Below are positions 4,801 to 53,900 of a stretch of 64,000 nt of DNA, piece by piece. The first letter of the stretch is position 1, and every line of letters begins with the position of its first letter. The notes under the pieces were generated by a model that ran no database searches, was not told the DNA's origin, and saw only the letters and a program-made list of their open reading frames with translations. Position numbers and translations under genes: made by a program. The DNA is from Macrostomum lignano (taxonomy: Eukaryota): assembly GCA_002269645.1 (NCBI GenBank), contig NIVC01003432.1, forward strand, positions 33,936-97,935. The letters run 5' to 3'.

Positions 4801-5229
4801 AACATTCAAATAGTTAAATAAATCAAACTTTCTGCATTTTCATAATTTTCTATCTTTATTGCAGCAATTAGCGATACCGATATTTGTCCGGAACAAAGCA
4901 AAAAAAATCTTTCTGCTTCAGCAAATCGGCTTAGCGAACCGTGATCTCCCGAGCCTTGGGAGCTAATGCTAAAATCTATAATCTTCCCAACACTGGGAGT
5001 CAGGTAATCCTATCACGTTTAACTGGATCTTTTCGACATCTGTGGCTAAAAAAGTTTTACAATTCAACTCCCAATGCTTTGCTGTGAAAAATCTGATTTT
5101 TTACGCATTAAAAATTTCTTGGATTGTCAAAGGATATGGTTGATCTTATGGGATTTAACAGCATTGGATTTTCGCTTCGTTTAGTGTCAGCTGTGGATAA
5201 AATTGTTTACAGAACTTCCGACTTATGAG

Positions 5230-7309: not shown

Positions 7310-8045
7310 TACACCCTCCTCACTTGCACTCTCCTCACCTGCACCTCGAAGTCGGCACCCTCCTCACCTGCACCCTTCTAACCTGAACCCTCCTCACCTG
7401 CACCCTCCTCACCTGCACCCTCCTCACCTGCACCCTCCTCACCTGCACCCTCCTCACCTGCACCCTCCTCACCTGCACTCTCCTCACCTGCACCCTTCTC
7501 ACCTGCACCCTCCTCACCTGCACCCTCCTCACCTGCACCCTCCACACCTGAACCCTCCTCACCTGCACCCTCCTCACCTGCACTCTCCTCACCTGCACCC
7601 TCCTCACCTGCACCCTCCTCACCTGCACCCTCCACACCTGAACCCTCCTCACCTGCACCCTCCTCACCTGCACTCTCCTCACCTGCACCCTCCTCACCTG
7701 CACCCTCCTCACCTGCACCCTCCTCACCTGAACCCTCCTCACCTGAACCCTCCTCACCTGCACCCTCCTCACCTGCACCCTTCTCACCTGCACCCTCCTC
7801 ACCTGCACCCCGAAGTCGGCACCCTCCTCACCTGCACCCTTCTCACCTGCACCCTCCACACCTGAACCCTCCTCACCTGCACCCTCCTCACCTGCACCCT
7901 CCTCACCTGCACCCTCCTCACCTGCACCCTCCTCACCTGCACCCTCCTCACCTGAACCCTCCTCACCTGAACCCTCCTCACCTGCACCCTCCTCACCTGC
8001 ACCCTTCTCACCTGCACCCTCCTCACCTGCACCCCGAAGTCGGCA
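7310..8045. repeat. 15-bp minisatellite (CACCTGCACCCTCCT)n in the protocadherin intron between coding exons 1 and 2
   Basis: Direct periodicity; CGAAGTCGGCAC interruptions near 7348, 7812 and 8036 mark sub-duplications. Confidence 0.96.
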
Positions 8046-8619
8046 CGCACACAAATATTGTTATAAATACATATAAAGACATATAAACTTTATAAAAGAG
8101 CAATTAAACTTTTTTAAATGCGATTTAATTAACAAAAAAATTGCTCTCAGTTGGACACCTAGAGCCGGATGCAAAATAGCAGAACTAACAATTTGATGTT
8201 AAAAGTTTTCTTCTATTTTCTCTTGACATTGACTACGAGTGGAGCAGCTTCAACACTCCATTCGGGTGTGAGAAGCATTAGGCTCAGCTCTTTTCTCTTA
8301 TGCCCTTATCTTCCTCCGGCTGACTCTCGCGAAAAAGGTCATTCAAAACGACACTCGACCGTAACTTGACACTTGGCCCTAAAACTGACGCGCGCATCGT
8401 GCCAAAAAACTTATTTTATTATTTCGTCACCTCATCTGTATGGAGCAAGTGTTTAGCCTTGGCTACAGGTGATTTTCCTATCTAACAGGGTGAGTTTAAT
8501 GGTTATAAGAAGTCTAAGTGCGTCTGAGTTCTCCCACACTTCCTTTCTGCAGCTAATTGTTGCTGTCGGAACTGAATCTCTGATTTTCATTGGTGATAAC
8601 TGTCTCTGCAAACCAATCT

Positions 8620-9215
8620 CTCCGACTCTCCATCTCCCTCTCTCCCTCTTCCTCTCCTTATATCCATGTCTCCCCATCTCCCCGTCTTCCTCTCCCTGTC
8701 TACCTATCTCCCTGTCTCCCTCTCCCTGTCTGTCTGTCTGTCTCCCTGTCTCCCTGTATCTTCTCTTCCTCTCTCCCTCTCTCCCTCTCTCCCTCTCTCC
8801 CTCTCTCCCTCTCTCCCTCTCTCCCTCTCTCCCTCTCTCCCTCTCTCCCTCTCTCCTCTCTCCCTCTCTCCCTCTCTCCCTGTCTCTCTGTCTCCCTCTC
8901 TCCCTCTCTCCCTCTCTCCCTCTCTCCCTGTCTCTCTGTCTCCCTCTCTCCCTGTCTCCCTGTCTCCCTCTCTCCCTCTCCCTCTCTTCCTCTCTCCCTC
9001 TCTCCCTCTCTCCCTGTCTCCCTGTCTCCCTGTCTCCCTCTCCCTGTCTGCCTGTCTCCCTGTCTCTCTGTCTCTTCTCTTCCTGTCTCCCTCTCTCCTT
9101 CTCTCCCTCTCTCCCTCTCTCCCTCTCCCTGTCTCCCTGTCTCCCTGTCTTCCTCTCACCCCTCTCCCTCTATCCCTCTTTCTCTGTCTGCCACTCTCCT
9201 TCTCCCCCTCCAGCC
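8620..9215. repeat. CT-rich low-complexity tract (CTCTCC/CTGT) just downstream of the protocadherin exon 1 donor
   Basis: Direct; source of the LSLSP-type ORFs. Confidence 0.95.
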
Positions 9216-9226
9216 CAGCCTCTCAC

Positions 9227-10054
9227 CGACAGCGGAACCAGCCGCCTCCCATTCTCAAACTGTGGCTCAAAATCGTTGGTGTTCTCCACTGCCAGTCGCA
9301 CTGTGAGATTCGAATGCAGCCTCCTCGGCTCGCCCTCATCGCTGGCCTGGACCGTCAGCTCAATGATCCTGACTCCGCGCTCTTCGCCCTCCAGATCGAT
9401 GTCGCCGACCACCCTCAGCTCCGGCGTGCCTTCGTCTCCATTGACCAGCGAGAACTTTGAGTACGGGCTGGAGTACCGCAGGCCGTCAGGGAAACTGTAA
9501 GTCACGGAGCCGTTCCGCCCCGCATCCGGGTCCGTGGCTCTGGGCAGCAGGACCCTGGCCTGCCTGTCGTGCTCCCGAATCAAAGAATGAAACACGCCGC
9601 GACTGCTCAAGGTTAAAAACTCTGGCGGATTATCGTTGATATCCTCGATTAGCACCTGCACGTTGATCAGCCGCATCCCGGCGGCGTCTTTTGGATTCGG
9701 CTGGAACATCGCCGTCACCTCAACTTGACAAACTCGATTAGGATTGGTTCGACAGCCTCTGATTGATTCTCTGTCGATTGGCTGGTTGACAACCAGCAGG
9801 CCGGTGCTGCGGTGCAGCTCGAACAGGTTCGCTGCCGGGTCACTTGACTGCTGCTCGATCAGCTGGTAGAGTCCAGTTGAAGATGCCGGAGGTGGTGACT
9901 GGACTCTCAGGTTGCAGACTAGGCTGCCCTTCGGCTGCTCCTCAACCACCGAACAGCGAGCCTGCTCGCTTGAGCATCTTATTGAATGAGGCCGGAGAAG
10001 CAGTAGAAGCAGCAATAGCGGAAACTGGTAGAGATGAGGCAAGAAAACTGACAT
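9227..10054 (-). CDS. Protocadherin coding exon 1: signal peptide plus cadherin repeats EC1-EC2 and start of EC3
   Basis: ATG at 10054; hydrophobic leader MSVFLPHLYQFPLLLLLLLLRPHSIRC; VEEQ, IDRESIRGC...VC (Cys loop typical of protocadherin EC1), DINDNPPEF, ATDPDAGRNG, DLE, ASDEG, NTNDFEPQF; donor TCG|GTGAGA, phase 0; upstream acceptor ttgcag| at 10118/10119. Confidence 0.95.
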
Positions 10055-10189
10055 TTGACTTCTGTGTGAAACAGTCTCTGATTGAGTCTCACAGTACTTA
10101 TGGCTGGCCTTAGAACAACTGCAATATGGATTAAAGGGGATGAGGATATTAGCTTGATACTTGCTGCAATCCAGAGTTTAACTTTATCC

Positions 10190-12325
10190 CATCCCACACT
10201 CTATCCCACACTCTATCATCCCACACTATCATCTCACACTCTATCATCTCACACTCTATCCCACACTGTATCTTACACTCATCCCACACTCTATCATCCC
10301 ACACTCTATCATCCCACACTCTATCCCACACTCTATCATCCCACACTCTATCATCTCACACTCTATCATCTCACACTCTATCCCACACTGTATCTTACAC
10401 TCATCCCACACTCTATCATCCCACACTCTATCATCCCACACTCTATCCCACACTCTATCATCCCACACTCTATCATCCCACACTCTATCCCACACTCGAT
10501 CATCCCACACTCTATCCCACACTCTATCATCCCACACTCTATCATCTCACACTCTATCCCACACTGTATCTTACACTCATCCCACACTCTATCCCACACT
10601 ATATCCCACACTCTATCATCCCACACTCTATCATCCCACACTCTATCCCACACTCTATCATCCCACACTCTATCCCACACTCTATCATCCCACACTCTAT
10701 CCCACACTCTATCATCCCACACTCTATCATCCCACACTCTATCATCCCACACTCTATCCCACACTCGATCATCCCACACTCTATCCCACACTCTATCATC
10801 CCACACTCTATCATCTCACACTCTATCCCACACTGTATCTTACACTCATCCCACACTCTATCCCACACTATATCCCACACTCTATCATCCCACACTCTAT
10901 CATCCCACACTCTATCCCACACTCTATCATCCCACACTCTATCCCACACTCTATCATCCCACACTCTATCATCTCACACTCTATCCCACACTGTATCTTA
11001 CACTCATCTCACACTCTATCCCACACTATATCCCACACTCTATCATCCCACACTCTATCCCACACTCTATCATCCCACACTCTATCCCACACTCTATCAT
11101 CCCACACTCTATCCCACACTCTATCCCACACTCTATCATCCCACATTCTATCATCCCACACTCTATCATCCCACACTCTATCATCCCACACTCTATCCCA
11201 CACTCTATCATCCCACACTCTATCATCTCACACTCTATCATCCCACACTCTATCATCCCACACTCTATCATCCCACACTCTATCCCACACTCTATCATCC
11301 CACACTCTATCATCTCACACTCTATCCCACACTGTATCTTACACTCATCCCACACTCTATCCCACACTATATCCCACACTCTATCATCCCACACTCTATC
11401 CCACACTCTATCATCCCACACTCTATCATCCCACACTCTATCATCCCACACTCTATCATCCCACACTCTATCATCCCACATTCTATCATCCCACACTCTA
11501 TCATCCCACACTCTATCCCACACTCTATCATCCCACACTCTATCATCCCACACTCTATCATCCCACACTCTATCCCACACTCTATCATCCCACACTCTAT
11601 CATCCCACACTCTATCATCCCACACTCTATCCCACACTCTATCATCCCACACTCTATCATCTCACACTCTATCCCACACTGTATCTTACACTCTATCATC
11701 CCACACTCTATCCCACACTCTATCATCCCACACTCTATCATCCCACACTCTATCATCCCACACTCTATCATCCCACATTCTATCATCCCACACTCTATCC
11801 CACACTCTATCCCACACTCTATCCCACACTCTATCATCCCACACTCTATCCCACACTCTATCATCCCACACTCTATCCCACACTCTATCCCACACTCTAT
11901 CATCCCACATTCTATCATCCCACACTCTATCATCCCACACTCTATCATCCCACACTCTATCCCACACTCTATCATCCCACACTCTATCATCTCACACTCT
12001 ATCCCACACTGTATCATCCCACACTCTATCATCCCACACTCTATCATCCCACACTCTATCATCCCACATTCTATCATCCCACACTCTATCATCCCACATT
12101 CTATCATCCCACACTCTATCATCCCCCACTCTATCCCACACTCTATCCCACACTCTATCCCACACTCTATCATCCCACACTCTATCCCACACTCTATCAT
12201 CCCACACTCTATCCCACACTCTATCATCCCACACTCTATCCCACACTCTATCATCCCACATTCTATCATCCCACACTCTATCATCCCACACTCTATCATC
12301 CCACATTCTATCATCCCACACTCTA
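10190..12325. repeat. Mixed 10/13-bp minisatellite CCACACTCTAT(CAT)C upstream of the protocadherin coding exon
   Basis: Direct periodicity; source of the SHTL/WDDRV/MIECG ORFs. Confidence 0.96.
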
Positions 12326-12964
12326 AGCGGACTTTAACTTAAATTAATATGAATTAATGTGACATTTCAACGGACGCTATCTGACAGCTTTTATCTGGCA
12401 CAACCGCTCAAGTCTCTATCTAAGAAGCAAAAAATATTTTCAACTCAACATCTCTGCTTATGAATCGCCAGCCCTGCAAAAAATGGAGAAAAATTGTACA
12501 AAAAAACCTGCCACCTCTTTTTTATTGACCTGTCGAATTTGATGTGGGCGCTCACGCGAGCGGCCTCTGCCCTTCATTGGGACGATTAAAAATGAGTAAA
12601 GCCTACAATGTGCAATTAGTGAATGAAATTCTCAAGGAAGACTGAAAACTCTCCCTCTAGCCAGCCAGAGATTGACGTCAGCTGGAGGGCCTCGTATTTC
12701 TAAGAAATTATAGGACTTAAAAATATATAGTGAGAAGACTGAGAGACCGGGGCGGTTGGGCGAAGTGAATTATTGATTTTGAGAGGCCCGCGAGAACTGA
12801 GTAGAACGGGGGAGCATTTCGCTACTCATTATTGGATGGAGACAGACGATTCGATTAAATTGGGAATATTCGGTCTTTATAGAGGGAGTTAATTTTTTAT
12901 GTCAAATTATTCCAGTGCTATCTCAGTCTCTGATGATGCCACAGTTCTTTTATTTTTTTCATAG

Positions 12965-14500: not shown

Positions 14501-15139
14501 GTCTGCCTGCCACCTCACCCTAAGTCCCTCTCAAAATGTCATTCGCATTTTTTCATATCAAAGCGAATGCCAGAGAGGCCGTGCAGACGAAAACATTGCG
14601 TGTCTTGGAGGCAGAGACAGAGAGATGGAGAGAGAAATGCGCAGCCTTGCCAACTGACACTCAGTGCATTGAGTCAGCAGCGCTCCCAGACACCAGAGAG
14701 GGACTTTGAGCTTGTTAATCTAGTGCGGCACGATAGAGTATCATCAAAGTCAGGGCGCGGGCCCTTTATCGGTAAAAACAGACAGACAAGGGGAGTCGCT
14801 GTTTCCAAGCAGGCCTTGTTGCTGCTTCGGCCCCTTTGATGTTTTCTGGAGAGTGGAAAATGATGCTTGCAGTTGAATGCTTACTCGCTTCACTGATCAG
14901 TTTTATGGTTTAGTCTTGAAATAATCTCAAAAAACAGTATTTGGGATTAGCTCATTTTGAAGAAGCCAAATTTAATATAAAATCTTATCTGAATTAAAGA
15001 ATAATGATTAGGCATGGAAAATATGAGAAAGTAGGACAATATGAGATGAAGAAGGAAGCTGAAATGAGGCTCGACTTCTAGTATTGAAGAATATGATTAG
15101 AAAAGAAAAGAAGAGAGATTCGAGAAGAAGACAGTGGGT

Positions 15140-15770
15140 AGGAGAGAGTGAGAAGGAGAGGGAGGAGAGGGAGAGGGAGAAGGAGAGGGAGGAGAGGGAG
15201 AGGGAGAAGGAGAGGGAGGAGAGGGAGAGGGAGAAGGAGAGGCAGATCCGAGTAGGAGGCACAGTGAGGGTCAGGGAGAAGGAGAGGCAGATCCGAGTAG
15301 GAGGCACAGTGAGGGTCAGGGAGAAGGAGAGGCAGATCCGAGTAGGAGGCACAGTGAGGGTCAGGGAGAAGGAGAGGCAGAGTCGAGTAGGAGGCACAGT
15401 GAGGGTCAGGGAGAAGGAGAGGCAGAGTCGAGTAGGAGGCACAGTGAGGGTCAGGGAGAAGGAGAGGCAGATCCGAGTAGGAGGCACAGTGAGGGTCAGG
15501 GAGAAGGAGAGGCAGATCCGAGTAGGAGGCACAGTGAGGGTCAGGGAGAAGGAGAGGCAGAGTCGAGTAGGAGGCACAGTGAGGGTCAGGGAGAAGGAGA
15601 GGCAGAGTCGAGTAGGAGGCACAGTGAGGGTCAGGGAGAAGGAGAGGCAGATCCGAGTAGGAGGCACAGTGAGGGTCAGGGAGAAGGAGAGGCAGATCCG
15701 AGTAGGAGGCACAGTGAGGGTCAGGGAGAAGGAGAGGCAGAGTCGAGTAGGAGGCACAGTGAGGGTCAGG
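15140..15770. repeat. GA-rich tract followed by about 12 copies of a 45-bp unit (GGCAGATCCGAGTAGGAGGCACAGTGAGGGTCAGGGAGAAGGAGA) in two alternating variants
   Basis: Direct; GATCC and AGTCG variants alternate in pairs. Confidence 0.95.
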
Positions 15771-16394
15771 CTGCAGTTGAGAAGACTCAGCGCAGCAAGT
15801 CGGAGTGAACGCCAAAAGTAACAGCAGCAGCAGCAGTGGCAACAGTCAGAGCCAGACAGGAAGCAACAAAATTAACAAAAGAAAGAGAAAAAATGTGCAT
15901 TTCTACGGTCCAAAATAGTTTTGGAGTAAAAATACGCTCGTACTAGCAATTTTGTTGCTATCAGGAGCTTTGATAGACATACATTCTGCATAACGTACTG
16001 AAGCCAGGGTTGATAATGTAGCCACTTCCTGTGCGAGTATGTTTCCAGTTATTGAAACTGAATATAAATTAGTAACCATATAAGCTAAGGCTGGAGAAGA
16101 TATGGTCTGTTTATTCTAAGCCCCTTGGCTGAAGTTTTGACTGGAATTATGCCAACTGTTTGTGTCATCTACATGTAGCAATGCAAAGTAATTAGAGCGA
16201 AATTCTATTTGAACCGCATGGCTAACATTGGTTTTCTATAGGCATTTCTAACCAGACTTATGCTTCTATAAATATTATTAGTCATTGCTGATTACTCAAT
16301 ATTTGTTTAGACAAAGTTGAATGCTTTAAGTTGCATCTGTGAGGCCTTAAGGAGTCATTTGTTGCTGGTTTGCCCAAATTTATACTCAGGATAG

Positions 16395-17390: not shown

Positions 17391-18567
17391 TCTACCATCT
17401 TATACTTAAGCTTGACCAATTTCTATCATTTAGACCGAGGCAGGACTACCTGACTTCAGACCTCTCAAATGTGAAAAAAGCAAAGAATGCAAAAAATGAA
17501 ATTACTTACTGGAACCGTTGCTATCATTTAGTAGTTAAGCCGACAAATTCTTTTATAAAGCCGAGCCTTCTCTGTAATGACAAGCTGCTTTTAAGTTTTT
17601 TTTCTCTACTTTTCTGCCAGCTGGAAAACCTGTGTGAGGTCCTTAACTCCAAACCCTCACCAGGCGCGTCAGCGCATGTTTCAACTAGTGGTCAACGCTG
17701 ATTGGCTGGGCTACGAACCAGCCAATGAGAGTCGACTAACTGTGTTATACAGATTTCAATGAATGATAAGCGATGCCTCCAGTGTGTGGCCTGTCATGGA
17801 GTGTTCGATAAAAGTGTATGGACAAGAGCCGTTGATTGCTACTACAAAATACTGTTTGACCTAAAAAGCGAAATGCAACCAAAACTCTTGATTGTCTATG
17901 GTAAATCCATGGCGGATGGCGGGCACCCTGGCGCAACATACCTGCGCGCAAATACTGTACGCATTCACGCACTCACATACACGTTCACACAGTGTGTACA
18001 TCGGTCCTGACTGTCTAATCGTCAGGCACGTACACTCCTGACTCTCGGTAGCTCTCTTGTGGTCGTGGCCAGAGAGTCAGACGCTTCCAAAGTTTCCTTT
18101 TCATATTAGGCAATTTTAGTACTCCCTGAACTACTATGCGACCTACAGCACAGCTTTGGTAGTAACAGTGGCCAGTGCAATTAATAACTTTTGACTTCTA
18201 TCTCTTCTGCAGAAGACAGCGAAGCAACATGCTGCGCCCCTGTCAGGGGCTTTGGTGGCCGACTTAAAATTTTTTTCAGTTCTGTTTCTATGTGTCGCCA
18301 AAAACTAAGTTTCTGCTTTCGCAAAACCGCGCGGTGACTTCTGGGGGGAGCCGGGGCACAGTGAGAGAGAAGAATGATTAGGGTGAGGATTTACTAAGCT
18401 TGCCTCCAGGCTGTTGGATGGCCCACCGGGGAGTGTGGAGACTGGGTAGGGTCGAGCCCCATAGACAGACAGATGGCGGAATTCACATCGCTGCCCGTGA
18501 CACGTCATAAATCAATCTAGGGGCGCTTGGTCGTGGCAAGCAGATGGGTACTGTTGAAAGATTCTCT

Positions 18568-19770
<1,203 letters not shown>

Positions 19771-20309
19771 GCGATGGACGAATGAACAGCAGGAGCCACT
19801 GACCCTCTTAAAGTGAGTTTTTACTGCTCCCTCATTCGAGTTTCTTATTTTACTGCTTCCACAAGAGCTGCTTCGAGTTTCTGGCTGGAACATCAGGGCA
19901 GGCAAGTCAGTCCGCTAGTAAAAAATGATTCCGCAGACATTTTTGGCACAGATTTTTGTCCAGTTCGTCCCAACTCGCTTTTTTTTGCCTGGCTGGACGA
20001 TGCAGAGAGGCGGGCGGGGGCAGCAAAGTGGGTGAAACTCGCCGCGCAGTTCGGCTTTTAGGGGGGGGTGGCAGAGATGCTTAGGGATGGCACACTGCAC
20101 TGCAGCAATGGGATATTGACAATTAAGCCTGTGGCTTCGATTCTTTTCGCAATAATTTACGTCAGTAGCTTCCGCCGTTGCGGTATTGGCGCAATCTGCC
20201 GCTAGTGTGCATGTTTTTGCCATGTTTTCGTTAGTGGGAGTTGGAGATCAAAGTATGCGGTATCATTTTGAAATTGTGTAAGCTTTTCCATTGGACTGTG
20301 CAGTGATAG

Positions 20310-20510: not shown

Positions 20511-20559
20511 AAGACACGAGACCTCAGACAGATGCTAGGACGCAAACTATACAGACACT

Positions 20560-21205
20560 TGTACAGACAATACAGACACTATTACAGACAGTATACAGAC
20601 ACTAATACAGACAATACAGACACTAATTTAGACATTACAGACACTAATTCAGACAATACAGACACTGATACAGACAATACAGACACTGATACAGACAATA
20701 CAGACACTGATACAGACACTACAGACACTGATACAGACAATACAGACACTGATACAGACACTACAGACACTGATACAGACAATACAGACACTGATACAGA
20801 CACTACAGACACTGATACAGACAATACAGACACTGATACAGACAATACAGACACTGATACAGACACTACAGACACTGATACAGACAATACAGACACTGAT
20901 ACAGACACTACAGACACTGATACAGACAATACAGACACTGATACAGACACTACAGACACTGATACAGACAATACAGACACTGATACAGACACTACAGACA
21001 CTGATACAGACAATACAGACACTGATACAGACACTACAGACACTGATACAGACAGTATGCAGACACTGATTCAGACATTACAGACACTGATACAGACAGT
21101 ATGCAGACACTGATTCAGACATTACAGACACTGATACAGACAGTATGCAGACACTGATTCAGACAATACAGACACTGATACAGACACTACAGACACTGAT
21201 ACAGA
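20560..21205. repeat. 21-bp minisatellite built from 9- and 12-bp subunits (ACAGACAAT ACAGACACTGAT)
   Basis: Direct; source of the DTDT/SVSV ORFs. Confidence 0.93.
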
Positions 21206-24475: not shown

Positions 24476-24827
24476 TCTTTCAGTCTACCCAATCGCAAAG
24501 AATGAATAAAAAGCTAAAACGCTTTTATTTCTACTTACAAGCTAGCTATTAGTAGCGCATTACGAGACATATTGCATAATTTAAATTTATAAAATCTGTA
24601 AACTTTAAATTTCATAGGTTCAGACAGCCGCTCAAAAATTGCATATAAAATCACCGACAAATCCGAAGGCAAGTCGCCTATCTCAAATAATCTCAGTCCA
24701 AAATCTCACCTTCTTTCTAACAAACAGTCGAAGCCTCATGCATTTCAGCGGCGCCCGAGGAGGCGGCTCCCGCTCTGTCAGCGATGTTGGCAGCGACAAT
24801 CGCCAAGAAACTCCGTCGACATCCGCA

Positions 24828-25226
24828 ATGTCTAAAATTCGACAACATCAGCAAATTCAATTTGGCGGCGGCGGCGGCGCGTCGCGCGACTCCAGCCTGG
24901 AGCGTCACGTGACCTTCTCGCCGGCCACACGCAGCCCCACGGCCGGGCACCGACGCCCGCCGCCATCGCCGGTGCCACCGTCGATGAGTCGTCGATTTGG
25001 CGCCGATGACGGCAGCGACGATGACGAGGAAGGAGAAGAAGACGATTATAGAGCTGATGAAGCCGAGCGTCGGGAAGCTGGGCATCTTCATCCGGCCAGC
25101 TTGCTGCAGTTCCCCGGTAGCTCGCTGGTCATCCCGTGCCCGCTGCCGCAGTCCTGCCCGGCGACGCCGCTGCGTCGTTCGCGCGAGTCGACGGCGGCAT
25201 CGAAGCAGCCGAGATCAACGCCGGAG
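24828..25226 (+). CDS. Exon 1 of a peroxiredoxin-like gene: disordered Pro/acidic N-terminus with an RVxF-type motif (RHVTF)
   Basis: GC-rich open frame; acceptor tttcag| at 24748/24749 (an upstream exon is possible); ATG 24828; donor GAG|GTGAGA, phase 0, in frame with the exon at 28829. Confidence 0.75.
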
Positions 25227-25229
25227 GTG

Positions 25230-27150
25230 AGAGATTCGATTGCGGTGTGAGATCTCAGAGAGTGAGACTCTGAGAATAGATTCCAAAAATGGATGCTCAC
25301 TTTAGTGAGACTTTGCAAATTCAATCTAAAAGTGAAAATCCTTGAATGAGGCTTTCAGCAGAGTAAGATTCCTAGGATTGAGACTTTCGTAGTGAGATTT
25401 TCATAGCGATTTTCTCAGGGTGAGATTTTAAGAGTGAGATTTTCATAGCGATTTTCTCAGGATGAGATTTTAAGAGTGAGATTTTCATAGCGATTTTCTC
25501 AGGGTGAGATTTTCAGAGTGAGATTCCGGCAGTGAGATTCCTCAACTGCCACTACCAGAGTGAGATTGCCAGAGTGAGATTCCCAGAGTGAGATTTCCAG
25601 AATGAGATTCCCAGAGTGAGATTCCCAGAGTGAGATTCCCAGAGTGAGATTCCCAGAGTGAGATTCCCAGAGTGAGATTCCCAGAGTGAGATTCCCAGAG
25701 TGAGATTCCCAGAGTGAGAGATTCCCAGAGTGAGATTCCCAGAGTGAGATTCCCAGAGTGAGATTCCCAGAGTGAGATTCCCAGAGTGAGATTCCCAGAG
25801 TGAGATTCCCAGAGTGAGATTCCCAGAGTGAGATTCCCAGAGTGAGATTCCCAGAGTGAGATTCCCAGAGTGAGATTCCCAGAGTGAGATTCCCAGAGTG
25901 AGGTTCCTGGAGTGAGATTCCAGCCACCTTAAGAGACAGATTTCATCCGATGAGTTTCAGGGTATAGGAATCTTTGACTTACAAAAGTCTTGACATTGCG
26001 TGTCACAGGTAATTAAATATTTTTCTACATTTTTAATAATTAATGCAAATATTGATTTCATCTGGCAATCCTCGTAACCCAATGACTTCCGTGGACAGAA
26101 CCTTCCCATAGATTCCCATGGAGCTTCCCCAAGCTAATCTCCTCGTCTCCAGTGGGCACGTGGGCTTCGTTTTCTGATGTTTCATGAGATGGGGAAAACG
26201 CAAACTAATCTTCATCAGTCAGTCACGCTGAATTTGGGTGAGGCTGAATTGGGATTCTGTTGTTTTAAAAGGGGAGATTGGGAGCAAATGACAAATCCAA
26301 GCTTTCTGAGGTCTAATCTGAGGGACACGGAAACTCTGTACGGATTCGAAATCTCCCTCCTTAAATTGAATTTTTTAGAATGTCAGTTCAGGAGTCTCAA
26401 TCTAGCAATTTCAGCCGGAGAACCTCACTCTGGGAATCTCATCCTAGGAATCTCACCATGAAAATCTCACTCTGGGAATCTCACTCTGGGAATCGAACTC
26501 TGGGAGTCTCACACGGTGAATATCTCTCTGGGAACCTCATTTTGGGAATCTCACTCTGGGAATCTCACTCTGGGATCTCACTCTGGAAATCTCACTCTGG
26601 AAATCTCACTCTGGAAATCTCACTCTGGAAATCTCACTCTGGAAATCTCACTCTGGGAATCTCACTCTGGTAAGAGAATCCCAGTCTGGGAATCTCACTC
26701 TGGGAATCTCACTCTGGGAATCTCACTCTGGGAATCTCACTCTGGGAATCTCACTCTGGGAATCTCACTCTGGGAATCTCACTCTGGGAATCTCACTCTG
26801 GGAATCTCACTCTGGGAAAATCACTCTGGGAATCTCACTCTGGGAATCTCAGTCTGGGAATCTCACTCTGGGATCTCACTCTGAAAATCTCACTCTGGAA
26901 ATCTCACTCTGGAAATCTCACTCTGGAAATCTCACTCTGGGAATCTCACTCTGGAAATCTCACTCTGGAAATCTCACTCTGGGAATCTCACTCTGGGAAT
27001 CTCATTCTGACAATCTCACTCTGGGAATCTCATTCTGGGATCTCAGTCTGTGAATCTCACTCTATGAATCACAATTTGGGTATCTCACGACGGTAATCAC
27101 ACCCTGTGAATTTAACTCTGGAAAACTCACTCTGAGAATCTCACTCTAAG
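25230..27150. repeat. Inverted pair of 14-bp minisatellite arrays: (CCCAGAGTGAGATT)n at about 25230-25925 and its reverse complement (AATCTCACTCTGGG)n at about 26420-27150
   Basis: Unit sequences are exact reverse complements, separated by a ~500-bp unique spacer. Confidence 0.93.
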
Positions 27151-27529
27151 TTTAAGTACATCAGCTAGCAAAGTTTCTCTCCGGCACTGGTGTACTAATT
27201 GTGCAAGTTTCAACAACATGCAATGGCCTCCGTTAAAATGGGAGCAGATGTGAGCCCCTGTGACAGCCGCAGTCTCCCTATCCATTGATGTTTTTGTGGG
27301 AAACACGACTAAAAACCTGGATGGACGGGGGCCGACTTCCCGTGTTGAAAAGAATTGTCGAAGTTTCTTTTTAATTAAAAAAAAATTCAGCGTATACCTT
27401 ACCTGCATGAGGATTAGGGCTGAAGCAATAATGCCTACTTATAATACAGTTATTGTCAGGATGAGGGCATTGTTAACTCTCTGTAGTGCTCAGTCTCGGG
27501 GGTGAGAGGCATGCAATGGACACATGAAG

Positions 27530-27825
27530 GGTATGAGAGTCACGGGAGAGTGGGGTGAGGGTTGCAGACATCAGAATCTCATATAAGAGTCACGGGTGAA
27601 GGCATCAAACTCTCATATGAGAGTCACGGGTAGAGGCATCAGAATCTCAAATGAGAGTCACGGGGAGAGGCATCAAAATCTCATATGAGAGTCACGGGGA
27701 GAGGCATCAAAATCTCATATGAGAGTCACGGTGGTGCAATCAAAATCTCATATGAGAGTCACGGGTAGAGGCATCAAACTCTCATGAGAGTCACGGGTAG
27801 AGGCATCAGAATCTCATACGAGAGG
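27530..27825. repeat. ~34-bp minisatellite (GAGAGTCACGGGTAGAGGCATCAAAATCTCATAT)
   Basis: Direct, about 8 copies. Confidence 0.9.
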
Positions 27826-28189
27826 CACCGAGAATCTTAGCAATAATTCGAAAAGAAAACAAGAATACCTTTTTGTACTTTCAGGTTGCCAAATTATCCG
27901 TTGTCTTCGGGCACTTTGGCTCATTAAAGGCCGTCAATTGATAATTAATGCTCATTTTTCATCTCAGATTCCTCCTCTTCGATGAGGATGTTTCAGGATA
28001 TTTTTAGATAAAAACTTCGCAAATTAAGTGAATTATGTAAAACTCATAAATCAACTGAATACGTGATCTGGAATCCTGCTATTGAAATCAGATGGTTAGA
28101 TTAGTGAAATTTTATACCATAAGTAGCGAAGAAAGAAATTGGATTATTTCATAATTGAGTGCGACAAAACCATGAATAAATCGCTGAGG

Positions 28190-28785
28190 AGATAGGAGGG
28201 TGAGAGAGTAGGAAGAGAAGGAGGAAGGCTTGAAATGAAGGTGGGAAAAGAGAGAATGAGGGAGGGAGGGAGAGGGAGACACGGAGAGAAGGAGAGAGTG
28301 AGAGAGAGGGAGAGAGGGAGAGAGGGAGAGAGGGAGAGAGGGAGAGAGGGAGAGAGAGGGAGAGAGAGAGAGAGAGGAGGGCGCCTCCAATCTCGGGCAC
28401 TGACACGGTAGAAAGTCAGAAAGGACTGAAAAAAGTCAATTTAAATTGAGTAGCCGATATTTCGAAATTAAATTTCTTCGTCAGAGCTGTAAGAGAAGGA
28501 GAGAGTGAGAGAGAGGGAGAGAGGGAGAGAGGGAGAGAGGGAGAGAGGGAGAGAGGGAGAGAGGGAGAGAGGGAGACACGGAGAGAGGAAGAGAGAGAGG
28601 GTGAGAAGGAAAGATGGAGAGAGGGAGAGAGGGAGAGAGGGAGAGAGGGAGAGAGAGAGGGTGAGAAGGAGAGAGGGAGAGAGGGAGAGAGAGGGAGGGA
28701 GGGAGGGAGGGAGAGAGGGAGATAGGTAGAAAGGGAGAGGGAGAGAGGGAGACGGGGAGACAGGGAGACAGGGAGAGATGGGAGA
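28190..28785. repeat. Two GA-rich low-complexity tracts (28190-28380, 28490-28785)
   Basis: Direct. Confidence 0.9.
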
Positions 28786-28828
28786 ACTCCTACAGCAATA
28801 GCTGTTCATCATTATCACCATTTCACAG

Positions 28829-29359
28829 CAGGATCAGCTGAAGAGGACCGTCAGCAGTTCGGCTGGGATCCCCAGACCGGGTGAAATTTTCCCGAGCATC
28901 GCGGCTCCGGCTCGACTGCCACAGGATGGGGCCGAGGTCGATCACCTGCTCCTGACTGACTGCTTCGATGCCCAGCATCCATTGCTGCTTTTTATCTTGC
29001 CGCCATCGAAGCGGACCCAGCGCGATCATCTAGCAAACTCGGTGTTGCAAACTTTCTCCAATCGAGTTGACGAATTTACCAACTGTCGCCTGATTGGTCG
29101 ACTCTGTAGTCATGGTGACACCGAGGAACTCGGTGCGGTAGCTTTTCCAATACTGGTGGACCTGTCGGGTCGTGTTGATGGAGCCTGCGGACTCGGTGAT
29201 AACTCGACTGTCTGTGGAATTTTCGCTCTGAGCTGCGTGGATTTTGGAGGCGACAAGCGGGCGATTCTGCAGTGGTCAGCGCTGTTTGCCGCTGTTGATG
29301 GAGCTCTGAAACAGCCTGATGGATGGGTGGAGCTTGCGCTGAAGATGCTTTCTGGATGA
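28829..29359 (+). CDS. Terminal exon encoding a divergent peroxiredoxin (AhpC/TSA, thioredoxin-fold) domain lacking the peroxidatic Cys
   Basis: Acceptor tttcacag|CAG, phase 0; 176 codons open. By-eye alignment to 2-Cys Prx: PGEIFPSIAAPA~GKPAPDFKATA, LLTD~LSDY, LLLFILP~VVLFFYP, FSNRVDEF~FSNRAEDF, LGAVAFPILVDLSGRV~LGPLNIPLLADVTRRL, CGIFAL~RGLFII. Confidence 0.78.
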   Translation, partial: QDQLKRTVSSSAGIPRPGEIFPSIAAPARLPQDGAEVDHLLLTDCFDAQHPLLLFILPPSKRTQRDHLANSVLQTFSNRVDEFTNCRLIGRLCSHGDTEELGAVAFPILVDLSGRVDGACGLGDNSTVCGIFALSCVDFGGDKRAILQWSALFAAVDGALKQPDGWVELALKMLSG

Positions 29360-30593
29360 CAGCACAGCGAATTCGAAAAAGGTACAAATCGACTTTTGAG
29401 TTTTTGACGTCTTACAACTGAAGTTTGTGTCTTCAGTGGAATGATATTACGAACAAATTGTCTGCATATTTTATGTGCACAATAGTCAGCGGAGCCTGCA
29501 GCCCTCCTGCGTATTTTTAATTTATTCTGTGTGGTGGTTTCTCGTCTCAAAATAAATCGATAGTTAAACAGTTCGATTTCTTTTCCAGGGTGAACTGGGC
29601 TGCTCACACCAAGAAGAAACAAACCAAGGATTCACAGCTAGTGAAACCACTGCCTATACCGATCAGTCCCAGACAATACCTATTGTACGTACTTGAATAA
29701 ACGTTAAATTATCGAAGAGAGCTTATGAATTACACAATACATTTTCCTAGATGTGTTAGTCATGCGAGTAACTGAAGTCATTCCATTTTCATAAATTTTT
29801 CAAGTAGTTAGTCGGATTTAGAAAATATCAAGTAAGCAAAATGTGCATCAGCTTTCTTACCGCGCACTTTTATCGAATAATAGTCTATGTTTCATGCTAG
29901 AATTTCTCTCACGGATGGGCCGCATAGTGCCATAGACTAAAAAAATACACTTTAACAAACTTAGGTAAGGAACAGCTATAATAAGCTGTTTTTTAATTAG
30001 CGTTGACCCCTCCATGCATAAAGTTGACGATGACTTGTTTAATTTGGTTGGAGCGATTAAGGCGACGTGCATAAAATACATGTAATCGTGTTCCTTTGAT
30101 GCCAACAAACCAGGATGTTAACACTATCAATAAAATATTGATTATACTTAACGTCGTTACGATTCTGTTTATAGTTTTTTAACGAACAGTAACTAAATTC
30201 CCTCATCAGATAGTTGCTGCATTATATCGTAACGTAAATAACACCAGAAAGGTTCTCTCACTCTCGTAGTGTAAACTCGGTCCAACTCGATAAAACCAAT
30301 TGAGAATTCATCTCCAGATAAAAAACAACTGATAAAAGCGATAAAAGTACACAAGGTCAGATCAAAAATGAGCATCAACTAATAAATTACTATAGTCTAT
30401 GGCCGCAAGCATCGGACGCATTGAAACAGGGAAATTTACGCCATAGACTTGCGCATTTCACAGTCTATGGTCGCTAATGACGAACTGTTTTTCAGATCGA
30501 GAGGAGTGGGGGAGAATGAGAGGCGCTTAGATTCGAGGCAGCGGACACAAGTAGTTTACAAAAAATCTGCTCTCAGTGAAAGCCAAAGTCAGC

Positions 30594-31589
30594 ATGGCCA
30601 AGATTCTAATTTGCGGCTTGTGCAACAAAGTGTTTATTGCCGAGGTAAATCTGATCGAACATCTCAAAACTCATATACCATTAGCTATGCACGTGGCCTT
30701 AGCGGCCAAAAGTGGTAGCGCTTCGAGAAACAATGAAGGTCAACAAAACTTCGTCAGTCCTAGCGTGGCGGTCTGCACTATAAAGGTAACTGCTTAATTT
30801 TTTAATCACTTGCGAAAATTACGACAACCAATAGAATAGGAATCTGATTAAAGCTTCCGAATTATTTTCGAACACGACACCCAGGTGGAGATTTGCAACG
30901 CGTCTCTCTCAGACGGTTCGACGCCCATTAACCAGATCAGCCAGAGACAAGAACCAACCGGCTCAGAAAGTCAACAGATGCTCGATCAGCAAACCATTCC
31001 GTCTTTACCGCGTCGAATACCAGAGGACGCCATCCAGAGTCGAGAGCCCTGCCCGACTAGCGACCAAGTGAACGTGCTCCGTCTCCGCCGCTTGGTCGCC
31101 GCCAATCGCTACCGACGCAAAGTGGCCTTCGAGTGTCGAGTTTGTCGCCGACAATTTAACTATCAGACTGCCGCTACGAAGCACGCCAACCACTATCACG
31201 CCGCCGCCGCGCATAACCGGCCCAAGCCGTACAACTTTCGCCAGAGCGCCAACGCTGGTCGCGTCTTGCCAGCAAGACGAATTCAAGAGAAACGCATTGC
31301 CGCTAGAAAGCAACCGAAGCAGAATAAAAAAACTTTGCCAAGTCGCGATGCGGCCCGGCAGGCGGACTTGGTCGACATGGAGGCGGATGGCAACAACGAG
31401 GAGGCCGCATCTGACAACGAAGCCGACCGGTCGTCCAGCCGCGGAAACGAAATAGTCGCCGAAGAAGATGACGAAGTCGAGATGCAGCCAAGCTCCGCTA
31501 GTGCCGACAACCAGGCGACATCGCAGGCGCCTCCCCAATCCGTTGCGTCTATAATTGAAGCGGCAAGGACCCAGCAACAACAACAACAT

Positions 31590-31621
<32 letters not shown>

Positions 31622-32473
31622 GCAGCAGCAATTTCTGCATCAACAACTGTTGTTGTCGGCGGTACAAGCTGAACGACAACGACTTCAGATGGCAGTTGCA
31701 AGTAGGCAATTTTATTACTGGTACTTTACAGATTTATATATCCTTATTCAAGCCTTACTGTATCCCCACAAAAATCCCCCACAGCGACGTCCTCTACGGC
31801 GCAATTGGGTCAGCCATCGCGGATTCTGCCTTGCCCACACTGTCCGATGACTTTCACGGACATTGGCTTCCTGGCCAGGCACGTCCAACTGCACAACGAA
31901 CTGCAGAAACAGCAACCGCTCCTATTGCAACAGGCGTCGCAGAATTCCACGCAGCCGTCGCAGTCAGCCTTCGGTTCAATTCCAATTCCGGGTGGTTCGA
32001 TTCCTGTTTCTGTAGCGCCCTGGTTGACCCCAGCCAGACTGGCTCCAGCTTCCTCCTCTCAGCAGCAGCAGCCGCAGGCCAAAGGACCAGCACCTGCTGC
32101 ACCAACAACCAAAACGCAGCTCGTTAGTCGGCCAACCCCACTTCTACCGCCAATGCCATCGCATTCGCAAGCTCTGCTAATGAGTCGGCCGGCAGGACCT
32201 GGACTTCTGCGGCCGAGGCAGCCGTTGCCGATACCATTCACAGCGCTGACCGGTCTGCAGCAGCAGCAACAGCAACAGAAACTTCCAGCGGGATTCCTTC
32301 CTGCCAACTTCATCTATGGCGGCGTTCCCGCTAATAACCTGGCAGCTCAGCGTGCTCTGCAGCAGACGCAACTGACTCAGCAGTCGTTGCCAATGCGCCT
32401 CATGCCGAGTATTCGACCGCAGCCGATTCTGGCAGCTCGAGATCATACCGCCGCTCCATCTTCGTCCAAATGA
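30594..32473 (+). CDS. C2H2 zinc-finger protein, 3 exons (30594-30785, 30885-31701, 31785-32473), about 565 aa, three dispersed fingers, basic and acidic tracts, polyQ
   Basis: Fingers CGLC...HLKTH, CRVC...HANHYH, CPHC...HVQLH; donors AAG|GTAACT and A|GTAGGC; acceptors ccag|GTG and ccacag|CG; phases join without stops. Confidence 0.88.
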
Positions 32474-50905: not shown

Positions 50906-53900
50906 TTAGGTCTGCGGCAGATAGTGCTCAACCCGTTCGAGCAGTGAATCAGAGTAGCCGGGGCTGTAGTACTTCACAATCTCCTCCGGGTAGCAGTTGT
51001 TGATGGTGTTGATGTACTCCGCTAGAGCGCTGCCCGGCTCCGCTCTGATCTCCTGGATCTTCTTCAGCCCGCCTGAGGTGACGAACAGTCGGCGGGACTT
51101 GGGATTGTGCGGCAGCACCTTGCTGAACTGGGCCACCACGTGCTTGAGGATGTTGGCCGGGGCTTCTTGGAGCAGCGGCTCCAGAGCCTCGAGGTGGACG
51201 CACTTTTGAAGGATGTGTTTCAGCGCTTTCTTGGACTGCCAAGGTTAGGGTTTGAGGAAGTGGTTTACTCAGGATTCTTCAGGTAATACTCAGGATTTAC
51301 ATCTTCAGGTAATACTCAGGATTTACATCTTCAGGTAATACTCAGGATTTACATCTTCAGGTAATACTCAGGATTTACATCTTCAGGTAATACTCAGGAT
51401 TTACATCTTCAGGTAATACTCAGGATTTACATCTTCAGGTAATACTCAGGATTTACATCTTCAGGTAATACTCAGGATTTACATCTTCAGGTAATACTCA
51501 GGATTTACATCTTCAGGTAATACTCAGGATTTACATCTTCAGGTAATACTCAGGATTTACATCTTCAGGTAATACTCAGGATTTACATCTTCAGGTAATA
51601 CTCAGGATTTACATCTTCAGGTAATACTCAGGATTTACATCTTCAGGTAATACTCAGGATTTACATCTTCAGGTTTCTTAAGACTCCAATTATCAGTCAT
51701 TTAGACACTTGGAGTCACTTAGAACATTGCAGGTAGTTATCGCAATCGCAATCCTCACCTTGATCTGCAGATCCTCGCTAACATCGGGCCTCAAATAAGC
51801 TCTGAGCAGTTTGGGCAGCACATTGGCCTGAGCAACAGCCTTGGCGTGCTCGGGCGAGTGGCGGCCAATCTGGCCCAGAGACCAGGCCGCCGCAGCCTGG
51901 ATGTGGTCCTCAGACTCGGTTTGCAGGACCGCGTCCAACGTTAGTACACCCTGCGGATGGGGGGGGCACGATCGTGATCTTAGGCTTTTGAAAGAATTGA
52001 GAAAATAAGCGCAGCGTGGGAGAGGCGGGATGGGGAGCGGGGGCGGCAGCCAATGGAGGGTTTTGGGCTACGAGGCAACCCCCATTTATTACTAGACTTG
52101 TAAAATATACGAGCTATATTTTAACTGCACTACTTACACTACAGATATCAGTAGACAAACTTGAAAATTTAATTTTTATACAAATGTAGCTCGTAAATGT
52201 AATTGCACATGTAAATAGCTTATGAAGAACGTGTTAATAAATCGAGACGGGGATTCCAGACACAAGCTCACACAGGGTGCACAGGGGCCCTGACTTTCTA
52301 ATCGTCAGGCATGTACAGTCTCCGTGCCTTTGGGGAATGAAAATGAACTCCAGGCACTCATTTTAGCGCCACAGGCACTCATTTTAGCGCCGCAGGCACT
52401 CATTTTAGCGCCGCAGGCACTCATTTTAGCGCCGCAGGCACTCATTTTAGCGCCGCAGGCACTCATTTTAGCGCCGCAGGCACTCATTTTAGCGCCGCAG
52501 GCACTCATTTTAGCGCCGCAAGCACTCATTTTAGCGCCACAGGCACTCATTTTAGCGCCGCAGGCACTCATTTTAGCGCCGCAGGCACTCATTTTAGCGC
52601 CGCAGGCACTCATTTTAGCGCCGCAGGCACTCATTTTAGCGCCGCAGACACTCATTTTAGCGCCGCAGGCACTCATTTTGTCGCCCCGTTGGCGACGCCT
52701 CCATAGTTAATCCCCAGACAGATTATGTCTGTTAAAAATTACCCTGGACACAATGACAGCCATGGCCAGATTCTCAGAGTGGGCGGCCACATATCCAAGC
52801 ATCATGACTCCCGGCAGGCGGACGTTCCCTCGACTGTCGCCGACAAAATCGACAATGGCGGCAACTCCGCCCGCATTCACAATGAGCTGCGACAGCTCAG
52901 GCGTGTGCTTGGCAACCTCGCGGATGAGGGTGGCGCAGTTCTTGCGAACATATTCGTCCGGGTCCTTCAGGCAGGTCAGCACAGCCGGGAAGATTTCGGC
53001 TTCGACCACCATTTCGGCCAGATCGACGGAGTGCTTGGAGATCTGGGCGAGGGCTGAGAACACCTGACGCTTCAGCTTGGCGTCAGGGTTCAGCACCATC
53101 TGGGCCAAGTGGGCGATCGCGCCTGGTATCGGGGGAGGCAGGGGACGGAGATTTTAATGGATTTTTCTCTTGCATTCTTATAATAATTTTCCACTTTCAT
53201 CTCCCTCTCATCTCCCCCTCTCATCTCCCCTCCCATCTTTACTCTCATCTCCAATCCCATCTCCCCTCTCATCCCCTCTCATCTCCCCTCCCATCTTCAC
53301 TCTCATCTCCCCTCCCATCTTCACTCTCATCTCTCCTCCCATCTCCCCACCCATCTCGCCTCTCACCCCCCTCTCATCCTCTTTCCTCACCCCCCTCTCA
53401 TCCCCCCTCATCCCTCTCTCACCCCTTCTCATCTCCCCTCTCATCCCCTTCTCATCTCCTCTCTCAACACCTCTCATAACGCCTCTTATCTCTTCTATCA
53501 TGAGATTAGATGAGAAATATAGCAGTCTGACTCTTATTCCTCTCTTTCTTCCATAGATTGTCCAAATCCCCATCCCGTTCCAAACTTCCTCCCAACTCAC
53601 CAGCGTCCACCACAGTCTGGGCGAGCTCTGGCGAGTGCTTAGAAATGTCGGACAGGGCCGAGGCGGCGATCCGCTTGAGGCTGAGGTCGGGCTCCTGCAC
53701 GCACAGCACCAGGAGCGGCACCGCGCCAGCGTCCACCACAGCCTGGGCGAGCTCCGGCCCGTGTCTGGCGATGTAGCCGAGGGCCCAGGCGGCGCTCTCC
53801 TTGACGCCCGGGTCGAATTCCTCCAGACAGATGACCAGAGCGTCTAGGGCGCCGCAGTCAACGACGGCTTGAGCCAGTTCTGGCGAGTGCTTGGCAACGG

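What the first reader, a model, noticed from the sequence alone, without database searches (positions are those of the whole stretch)
28829..29359. Pseudo-peroxiredoxin: PxxxTxxC is PxxxTxxD and the catalytic Arg is Cys
Seen: the exon aligns by eye along most of a 2-Cys Prx fold, and the active-site segment reads PSKRTQRD (29003-29026). Pro and Thr are kept at the right spacing, but Asp sits at the peroxidatic Cys position. The conserved RGLFII segment reads CGIFAL, and six other Cys are scattered through the domain. Known: peroxidase activity needs Pro, Thr, Cys and Arg, and Cys>Asp is used experimentally to mimic the hyperoxidised (sulfinic) state linked to Prx chaperone/signalling roles. 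Inference: an intact gene for a naturally dead Prx that may act as a scaffold, a hetero-oligomer partner or a redox sensor.
Basis: partly seen in the sequence, partly recalled or inferred. Interest (0 to 1): 0.75.

Follow-up and report, generated by a model that had tools for sequence, protein, structure and literature searches.

The report
Possible cysteine-less peroxiredoxin-like flatworm exon
An unannotated, intact coding-looking exon in the flatworm Macrostomum lignano weakly resembles the antioxidant enzyme peroxiredoxin and lacks its catalytic cysteine and arginine, but the resemblance is borderline and neither expression nor conservation could be tested.

Summary
The sequence facts hold. 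Window 28829-29359 (+) is an open frame of 176 codons plus TGA. It follows a good AG acceptor and is in phase with an upstream open frame that ends at a GT donor (25226/25227). PSKRTQRD lies at 29003-29026, CGIFAL at 29213-29230, and there are six Cys.

The window is Macrostomum lignano contig NIVC01003432.1. The exon is in no predicted protein and has no detectable homologue anywhere.

The peroxiredoxin (Prx) resemblance is invisible to HMMER (Pfam, NCBIfam, PDB: nothing). Profile comparison finds it: hhalign score 32-33, P about 1.6e-4, probability about 50%. The alignment is always the same collinear one, residues 13-122 against Prx columns 2-115. The score is unstable, ranging from 11 to 40 with the make-up of the profile. 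The C-terminal third does not align.

Which residue sits at the peroxidatic Cys column changes with the profile (Asp66, Ala69 or Leu68). Two statements are robust: no Cys between residues 46 and 85, and no Arg or Lys between 116 and 142.

AlphaFold without homologues failed (pLDDT 36-38).

Verdict: probably a real, lineage-restricted coding exon, and possibly a highly diverged, catalytically dead Prx-like domain. The function is untested. Interest is modest.

The parts
24738..25226 (+). Candidate exon 1 (first coding exon). In-frame ATGs at 24738 and 24828. It encodes a low-complexity Ser/Pro/Gly/acidic N-terminal region of 133-163 aa.
   Evidence: The frame is open from 24618 and ends at the donor AG|GTGAGA at 25226/25227. 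GC is 66% against 45% in the intron. No Pfam family.
25227..28828 (+). Putative intron of 3602 nt, GT...AG, filled with tandem repeats. Two arrays of one 14-nt unit lie in opposite orientation (25412-25921 and 26420-27147).
   Evidence: arms of about 198 nt, 96% complementary; splice sites.
28829..29359 (+). Terminal coding exon: 176 codons plus TGA. This is the finding.
   Evidence: P(open by chance) = 3.5e-4 per frame. Best codon score of the six frames. GC1/2/3 = 0.66/0.46/0.56.
28865..29194 (+). Residues 13-122, the segment with collinear profile similarity to peroxiredoxins. By the Prx alignment it would span the N-terminal hairpin, beta3, helix alpha2, beta4, beta5 and alpha4, with about 10 residues missing where Prx has helix alpha3.
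   Evidence: hhalign score 33.1, P = 1.6e-4, probability 51%. A 22-sequence profile gives 32.3. Controls.
29003..29026 (+).
Evidence: There is no Cys in residues 46-85.
29054..29077 (+). FSNRVDEF (residues 76-83), the strongest local match to typical 2-Cys Prx (FSNRAEDF in PRDX2, FSDRAEEF in PRDX1).
29129..29161 (+). LGAVAFPILVD (residues 101-111), aligned with the GGLGPLNIPLLAD segment of 2-Cys Prx.
29213..29230 (+). The profile alignment does not support this.
   Evidence: There is no Arg or Lys in residues 116-142.
29551..29556 (+). AATAAA, a candidate polyadenylation signal 192 nt after the stop codon.

Best explanation
The finding is the terminal exon of an unannotated two-exon gene of Macrostomum lignano. 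It lies on contig NIVC01003432.1 at 62764-63294, and exon 1 ends at 59161. The gene encodes a protein of about 310-340 aa: a disordered, acidic, Ser/Pro-rich N-terminal half and a C-terminal domain of about 165 aa.

The domain is most likely a very diverged derivative of a typical 2-Cys peroxiredoxin (thioredoxin-like fold). It has lost the peroxidatic Cys, the conserved active-site Arg, helix alpha3 and the C-terminal arm that carries the resolving Cys. It therefore cannot work as a thiol peroxidase. If it is expressed, it would act as a non-catalytic binding module.

Shown: the open frame, the splice signals, the coding-like composition, the organism, the absence of Cys and Arg at the catalytic regions, and the weak collinear profile similarity.

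Inferred: the fold, descent from a Prx, expression, and any function.
For: Gene-like features:
- The ORF and splice phases.
- The chance of an open frame this long is 3.5e-4.
- Frame 1 has the best codon score of the six frames, at the level of the annotated non-SPAG6 genes.
- The GC1>GC3>GC2 periodicity matches known exons.

Prx similarity:
- hhalign against a Prx profile gives score 33.1, P = 1.6e-4, probability 51% over 101 columns.
- The same collinear range comes back with a 22-sequence profile (32.3). It also came top in 14 of 15 re-sampled profiles, with probability up to 85%.
- 400 and 150 shuffles reach at most 21.9 and 27.6.
- The other 53 ORFs of the window reach at most 18.2.
- Unrelated alpha/beta proteins score 12-16, while the true remote relatives PRXL2C and SCO1 score 29.5 and 50 against the same profile.
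- There is no similarity to GPx, TlpA/ResA, Trx or PRXL2 profiles.
- The typed Prx profile retrieves 167 PDB peroxiredoxins at E<1e-10, so it is a valid Prx profile.

Organism: window 40906-64000 is 100% identical to NIVC01003432.1.
Against: - No HMMER-level signal at all: Pfam, NCBIfam and PDB are empty at E<=10. hmmsearch --max against the Prx profile gives 1.1 bits, which is below several random ORFs of the window.
- The hhalign score falls to 11-23 with some profile compositions.
- The C-terminal third is not alignable.
- The P-value is not independent of how the finding was chosen.
- AlphaFold2 models have pLDDT 36-38 and Foldseek finds nothing.
- No homologue was found among 1.84 billion representatives or 5.8 billion clusters, and there is not even a self hit. 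Neither public M. lignano proteome contains the exon.
- A related flatworm transcriptome is in the collection, with SPAG6 87% identical, yet it gave no ortholog.
Confidence: 0.42

Rival explanations
1. It is a real, lineage-restricted (orphan) protein-coding gene, but its C-terminal domain has a fold unrelated to peroxiredoxins. The Prx-like motifs (PxxxT, FSNRVDEF, FPILVD) are coincidental.
For: The coding signals are good. The family signal is absent in HMMER and fragile in hhalign. The probability of about 50% leaves half the weight here. PxxxT alone is expected by chance about 0.4 times in a protein of this composition (my estimate from the residue counts).
Against: The same collinear alignment of 95-123 columns, starting at the domain's N-terminus, comes top in nearly all Prx profiles tried. 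Noise alignments average about 20 columns, with a maximum of 90. No other thioredoxin-fold family gives any signal.
Confidence: 0.25
2. It is not a functional gene. It is an unexpressed open frame, either a chance ORF in a GC-rich island or a recently inactivated relic.
For: It is absent from all annotated M. lignano proteins and from every transcript-derived protein in the collections. It has no ortholog anywhere. It lies in a repeat-dense stretch of about 40 kb, with no called gene in the 10 kb of it that could be checked. GC3 is lower than in the expressed neighbours.
Against: P(open for 185 codons) = 3.5e-4 at the local composition. It is in phase with a second long ORF through canonical GT/AG sites. 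It has coding periodicity. If it were a neutrally decaying Prx copy diverged beyond HMMER detection, stop codons would be expected. The neighbouring C2H2 zinc-finger ORF is also unannotated, so the annotation here is incomplete.
Confidence: 0.23
3. It is a Prx-like domain that remains redox-active or metal-binding through non-canonical cysteines. The two C-x6-C pairs are CRLIGRLC (86-93) and CGIFALSC (129-136).
For: Six Cys in 176 residues, with two identically spaced C-x6-C pairs on the predicted strands beta4 and beta6.
Against: No Cys lies near the N-terminus of helix alpha2. From my knowledge of the Prx fold, beta4 and beta6 are separated by beta3, so a single site formed by them is unlikely. 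There is no conservation data.
Confidence: 0.1

Closest known systems
Typical 2-Cys peroxiredoxins (Prx1/AhpC subfamily; e.g. human PRDX1 and PRDX2, Pfam AhpC-TSA PF00578)
   Same: Collinear profile similarity over residues 13-122. A hydrophobic strand ending in Pro (LLLFILP against VVLFFYP). FSNRVDEF against FSNRAEDF. LGAVAFPILVD against LGPLNIPLLAD. The domain length is comparable. The signal depends on the animal-type 2-Cys members of the profile.
   Different: No Pfam hit. No peroxidatic Cys and no active-site Arg. There are 3-4 extra residues between the Pro and the FSNR helix motif. About 10 residues are missing where helix alpha3 sits. There is no C-terminal arm or resolving Cys. A disordered extension of 130-160 aa lies at the N-terminus.
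Engineered Cp-to-Asp variants that mimic hyperoxidised Prx (Arabidopsis 2-CysPrx C54D; PMC3733160)
   Same: In that paper C54D mimics the sulfinic form and had the highest chaperone activity of the variants tested.
   Different: Those variants keep every other Prx feature: the Arg, the decamer interfaces and the C-terminal tail. Here the register is not reproduced by the profile alignments (Ala69 or Leu68), and the Arg, helix alpha3 and the tail are missing, so the analogy is weak.
Other thioredoxin-fold families, including Prx-like 2 (PRXL2A/B/C), TlpA/ResA, SCO, GPx and Trx
   Same: At most the general thioredoxin-like alpha/beta pattern.
   Different: hhalign against small profiles of these families gives only noise (scores 12-15). 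None of their CxxC-type motifs is present.

Membership tests
Peroxiredoxin (AhpC-TSA / Redoxin) | Significant match to the family HMM (Pfam PF00578/PF08534 or NCBIfam Prx models) | tested here: not met
   0 families at E<=10 in Pfam and NCBIfam. PDB phmmer finds no Prx. hmmsearch --max against a Prx profile gives 1.1 bits.
Peroxiredoxin (AhpC-TSA / Redoxin) | Thioredoxin-like Prx fold | tested here: inconclusive
   hhalign probability is 49-51%, ranging from 0.1% to 85% with profile make-up. AlphaFold2 single-sequence models have pLDDT 36-38. Foldseek finds nothing. The order of low-confidence secondary-structure elements is compatible with the fold.
Peroxiredoxin (AhpC-TSA / Redoxin) | Peroxidatic Cys in the PxxxTxxC motif at the N-terminus of helix alpha2 | tested here: not met
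   No Cys in residues 46-85. The aligned column holds Asp66, Ala69 or Leu68 depending on the alignment.
Peroxiredoxin (AhpC-TSA / Redoxin) | Conserved Pro and Thr of the active-site motif | tested here: inconclusive
Pro58 or Pro59 aligns with the Pro in all alignments.
Peroxiredoxin (AhpC-TSA / Redoxin) | Conserved active-site Arg at the start of strand beta6 | tested here: not met
   No Arg or Lys in residues 116-142. In the only extended alignment the column falls on Ile131.
Typical 2-Cys Prx subfamily | Resolving Cys on a C-terminal arm (VCP motif) | tested here: not met
   The protein ends at residue 176, directly after the last predicted helix. There is no C-terminal extension and no Cys after residue 136.
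Peroxiredoxin (AhpC-TSA / Redoxin) | Thiol-dependent peroxidase activity | not testable with these tools
   This needs a recombinant protein assay.
Pseudoenzyme (dead paralogue maintained by selection) | Expressed and under purifying selection while lacking catalytic residues | not testable with these tools
   No ortholog or paralog was retrievable. The second genomic copy (NIVC01000827.1) could be fetched only as far as window position 41882.
PRXL2 / TlpA-ResA / GPx / thioredoxin | Profile similarity and a CxxC-type motif | tested here: not met
   hhalign scores are 12-15 with P>0.09. There is no CxxC in the sequence.

The most novel reading that the evidence does not exclude
A Macrostomum-specific pseudo-peroxiredoxin that arose from a typical 2-Cys Prx. 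Its Asp66 permanently mimics the sulfinylated peroxidatic cysteine. The protein would act as a constitutive holdase, or as a partner that binds canonical Prx and tunes its oligomer state, tethered through its long disordered N-terminal region.
Probability: 0.07. Interest if true: 0.6.

Novelty: new variant of a known kind. Interest (0 to 1): 0.3.

Why it matters
Searches of the held literature for a naturally cysteine-less (pseudo-)peroxiredoxin found nothing relevant. To my knowledge, peroxiredoxins are defined by the peroxidatic Cys.

A naturally Cys-less and Arg-less Prx-derived domain kept as an open reading frame would be a natural test of the peroxidase-independent roles of the Prx scaffold, such as chaperone or binding functions. 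Those roles are so far studied mainly with engineered mutants such as C54D (PMC3733160).

M. lignano is experimentally tractable (my own knowledge: RNAi, in situ hybridisation and transgenesis are established), so the idea could be tested.

As it stands the value is limited. The fold assignment is borderline, and nothing shows that the gene is expressed or conserved.

Tried and rejected
- HMMER routes were all empty: Pfam and NCBIfam at E<=10 and PDB phmmer. phmmer against 1.84 billion representatives gave one spurious hit to a bacterial repeat protein. The word-indexed search of 5.8 billion clusters gave nothing, after three time-outs.
- A scan of metagenome contigs found nothing.
- There is no paralog in the window and no canonical Prx in the window.
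- Exact look-ups of 15 candidate products and 3 window ORFs were all absent.
- AlphaFold2 was run twice without an alignment and gave pLDDT 36.5 and 37.7.
- I did not feed a Prx alignment to AlphaFold. It would have been circular, and those sequences were not admissible anyway.
- Fetching the second genomic copy for a dN/dS test failed. The nearest retrievable locus stops 12.5 kb short of the exon.
- The antisense ORF 29110-29622 was rejected as coding. It has the worst codon score and flat periodicity.
- A processed or decaying Prx pseudogene was considered unlikely, because the frame is intact at a divergence beyond HMMER detection.
- Rfam and tRNA scans of the window were empty.
- Literature searches for natural Cys-less Prx found nothing relevant.

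Full report
**1. What is in the sequence**

From 28829 the + strand is open for 176 codons and ends in TGA at 29357-29359. The other two frames are full of stops.

- PSKRTQRD is residues 59-66 (29003-29026) and CGIFAL is residues 129-134 (29213-29230). The six Cys are at 45, 86, 93, 120, 129 and 136.
- The exon starts after ...TCATTATCACCATTTCACAG|CAG.
- An upstream frame, open from 24618 with ATGs at 24738 and 24828, ends at CCGGAG|GTGAGA (25226/25227). Both junction sides are in phase 0.
- AATAAA lies at 29551-29556.
- The 3.6-kb intron is almost entirely tandem repeats.

**2. Is it more than chance, and is it coding?**

- At the exon's own composition, a given frame stays open for 185 codons with P = 3.5e-4.
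- With a small codon table from the window's SPAG6 and cadherin exons, frame 1 scores best of the six frames. Its score (0.004) matches the annotated 165-aa gene (0.006) and the left-out cadherin exon (0.019). Control ORFs score -0.2 to -0.44.
- GC at codon positions 1/2/3 is 0.66/0.46/0.56. Known exons have the same shape and control ORFs are flat.
- The overlapping antisense ORF (29110-29622) looks non-coding.

I take the exon as probably coding.

**3. Where the window comes from**

- A SPAG6 exon at 52.7-53.1 kb is identical to M. lignano BOX15_Mlig008678g2.
- The fetched locus L002 (GCA_002269645.1, NIVC01003432.1) is 100% identical to window 40906-64000. Window position w therefore equals record position w+33935.
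- A second copy, 90-99.7% identical, lies on NIVC01000827.1. The part I could fetch reaches only window 41882.

**4. Homologues**

None were found.

- phmmer against 1.84 billion representatives gave one spurious repeat-protein hit and no self hit.
- The 5.8-billion-cluster search gave nothing.
- A metagenome scan gave nothing, and there is no paralog in the window.
- Exact look-ups of candidate products were all negative.

So the exon is in no protein of the M. lignano annotations held in these collections. The neighbouring C2H2 zinc-finger ORF is also missing, so annotation in this stretch is incomplete. A related flatworm transcriptome is in the collection, with SPAG6 87% identical, but it yielded no ortholog.

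**5. The peroxiredoxin resemblance**

HMMER sees nothing.

- Pfam and NCBIfam are empty at E<=10, and PDB is empty.
- BLASTP against PRDX2 is not significant, although one weak HSP pairs FSNRVDEF with FSNRAEDF.

As a profile they retrieve 167 PDB peroxiredoxins at E<1e-10, so the profile is valid.

- hmmsearch --max with it gives the exon 1.1 bits. That is not above random ORFs of the window.
- hhalign gives score 33.1, P = 1.6e-4 and probability 51%, for query 13-122 against profile columns 2-114.

Controls for the hhalign score:

| Control | Result |
|---|---|
| 400 shuffles of the query | mean 13.1, maximum 21.9 |
| Reversed query | 9.7 |
| 53 other non-repetitive ORFs of the window | at most 18.2 |
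| Eight unrelated alpha/beta proteins | 12-16 |
| True remote relatives of Prx | PRXL2C 29.5, SCO1 50, ResA 89 |
| GPx, TlpA-like, Trx and PRXL2 profiles against the exon | noise |
| 22-sequence Prx profile | 32.3; 150 shuffles reach at most 27.6 |

The weakness is instability.

- Leave-one-out and random half-profiles give scores from 11 to 40.5, with probabilities from 0.1% to 85%.
- Without the animal typical 2-Cys members the signal disappears.
- In its favour, the top alignment is almost always the same long collinear one.

I put true homology at roughly one half.

**6. Active-site claims**

Between the conserved Pro and the FSNR helix motif, the exon has 3-4 more residues than Prx. The register is therefore ambiguous.

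The C-terminal third (123-176) does not align on its own. In the one extended alignment the Arg column is Ile131, not Cys129.

Two statements hold in any register: there is no Cys in residues 46-85, and no Arg or Lys in residues 116-142. About 10 residues are missing where Prx has helix alpha3, and there is no C-terminal arm with a resolving Cys. If this is a Prx fold, it is catalytically dead. 'Asp as a sulfinic mimic' is not established. The background fact is correct: C54D mimics hyperoxidised plant 2-CysPrx and had the highest chaperone activity (PMC3733160).

**7. Structure**

AlphaFold2 without homologues gave pLDDT 36.5 for the full exon and 37.7 for residues 13-176. Foldseek returned noise. 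The low-confidence secondary-structure order (strand, long helix, strand, strand, strand, helices) is compatible with a Prx-like fold but proves nothing.

**8. Verdict**

| Explanation | Confidence |
|---|---|
| Real, lineage-restricted two-exon gene whose C-terminal domain is a highly diverged, Cys-less and Arg-less Prx derivative, acting if at all as a non-catalytic module | about 0.42 |
| Orphan gene with an unrelated fold | 0.25 |
| Unexpressed or relic ORF | 0.23 |
| Prx-like domain using non-canonical Cys | 0.10 |

Expression data, the second genomic copy and congeneric orthologs, and an HHsearch or AlphaFold run on a real alignment would decide. Interest is modest at 0.3. A natural dead Prx would be a nice pseudoenzyme case, but the evidence is borderline.

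Noticed in passing
window 25412-25921 and 26420-27147: The putative intron contains two arrays (36 and 52 copies) of the same 14-nt unit in opposite orientation. They give arms of about 198 nt that are 96% complementary, which could form a long hairpin in DNA or pre-mRNA. GA-rich 8-mer arrays (28250-28381, 28492-28785) abut the splice acceptor.
   Followed up: partly
window 30885-31850 and 31805-32473 (+): Two overlapping-frame ORFs encode C2H2 zinc-finger motifs and a polyQ tract, 1.5 kb downstream of the finding. They have coding-like periodicity but are absent from all protein collections. The 45-nt frame overlap suggests a short intron or an assembly indel.
   Followed up: partly
window 40906-64000 = NIVC01003432.1:74841-97935; second copy L001 = NIVC01000827.1:490147-515781: The window is the last 64 kb of M. 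lignano contig NIVC01003432.1. A second copy of the SPAG6 region, 90-99.7% identical, lies on another contig. It could be an allele or a recent duplicate.
   Followed up: partly
window 50909-54822 (-): SPAG6 (BOX15_Mlig008678g2), found as five tblastn-matching exon segments.
   Followed up: yes
window 9170-10054 (-): First exon of a protocadherin-like gene, with a signal-peptide-like start and Cadherin_2 and Cadherin domains.
   Followed up: no
window 1031-4809, 7335-8054, 10082-12337, 15008-15842, 18483-19905, 20532-21113, 52305-52710: Many of the longest ORFs in the window are minisatellite arrays that read open in several frames (for example SDAGV, IYLS and HTLSS units). ORF length alone is misleading in this genome.
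   Followed up: no
window 29084-29107 and 29213-29236: The exon carries two identically spaced C-x6-C pairs, CRLIGRLC and CGIFALSC, on two predicted beta-strands. Their significance is unknown.
   Followed up: no
window 57799-58434 (+): A 211-aa ATG ORF with a hydrophobic segment and a sub-threshold DUF1218 match. Its codon score is coding-like, but it is not in the collections.
   Followed up: no
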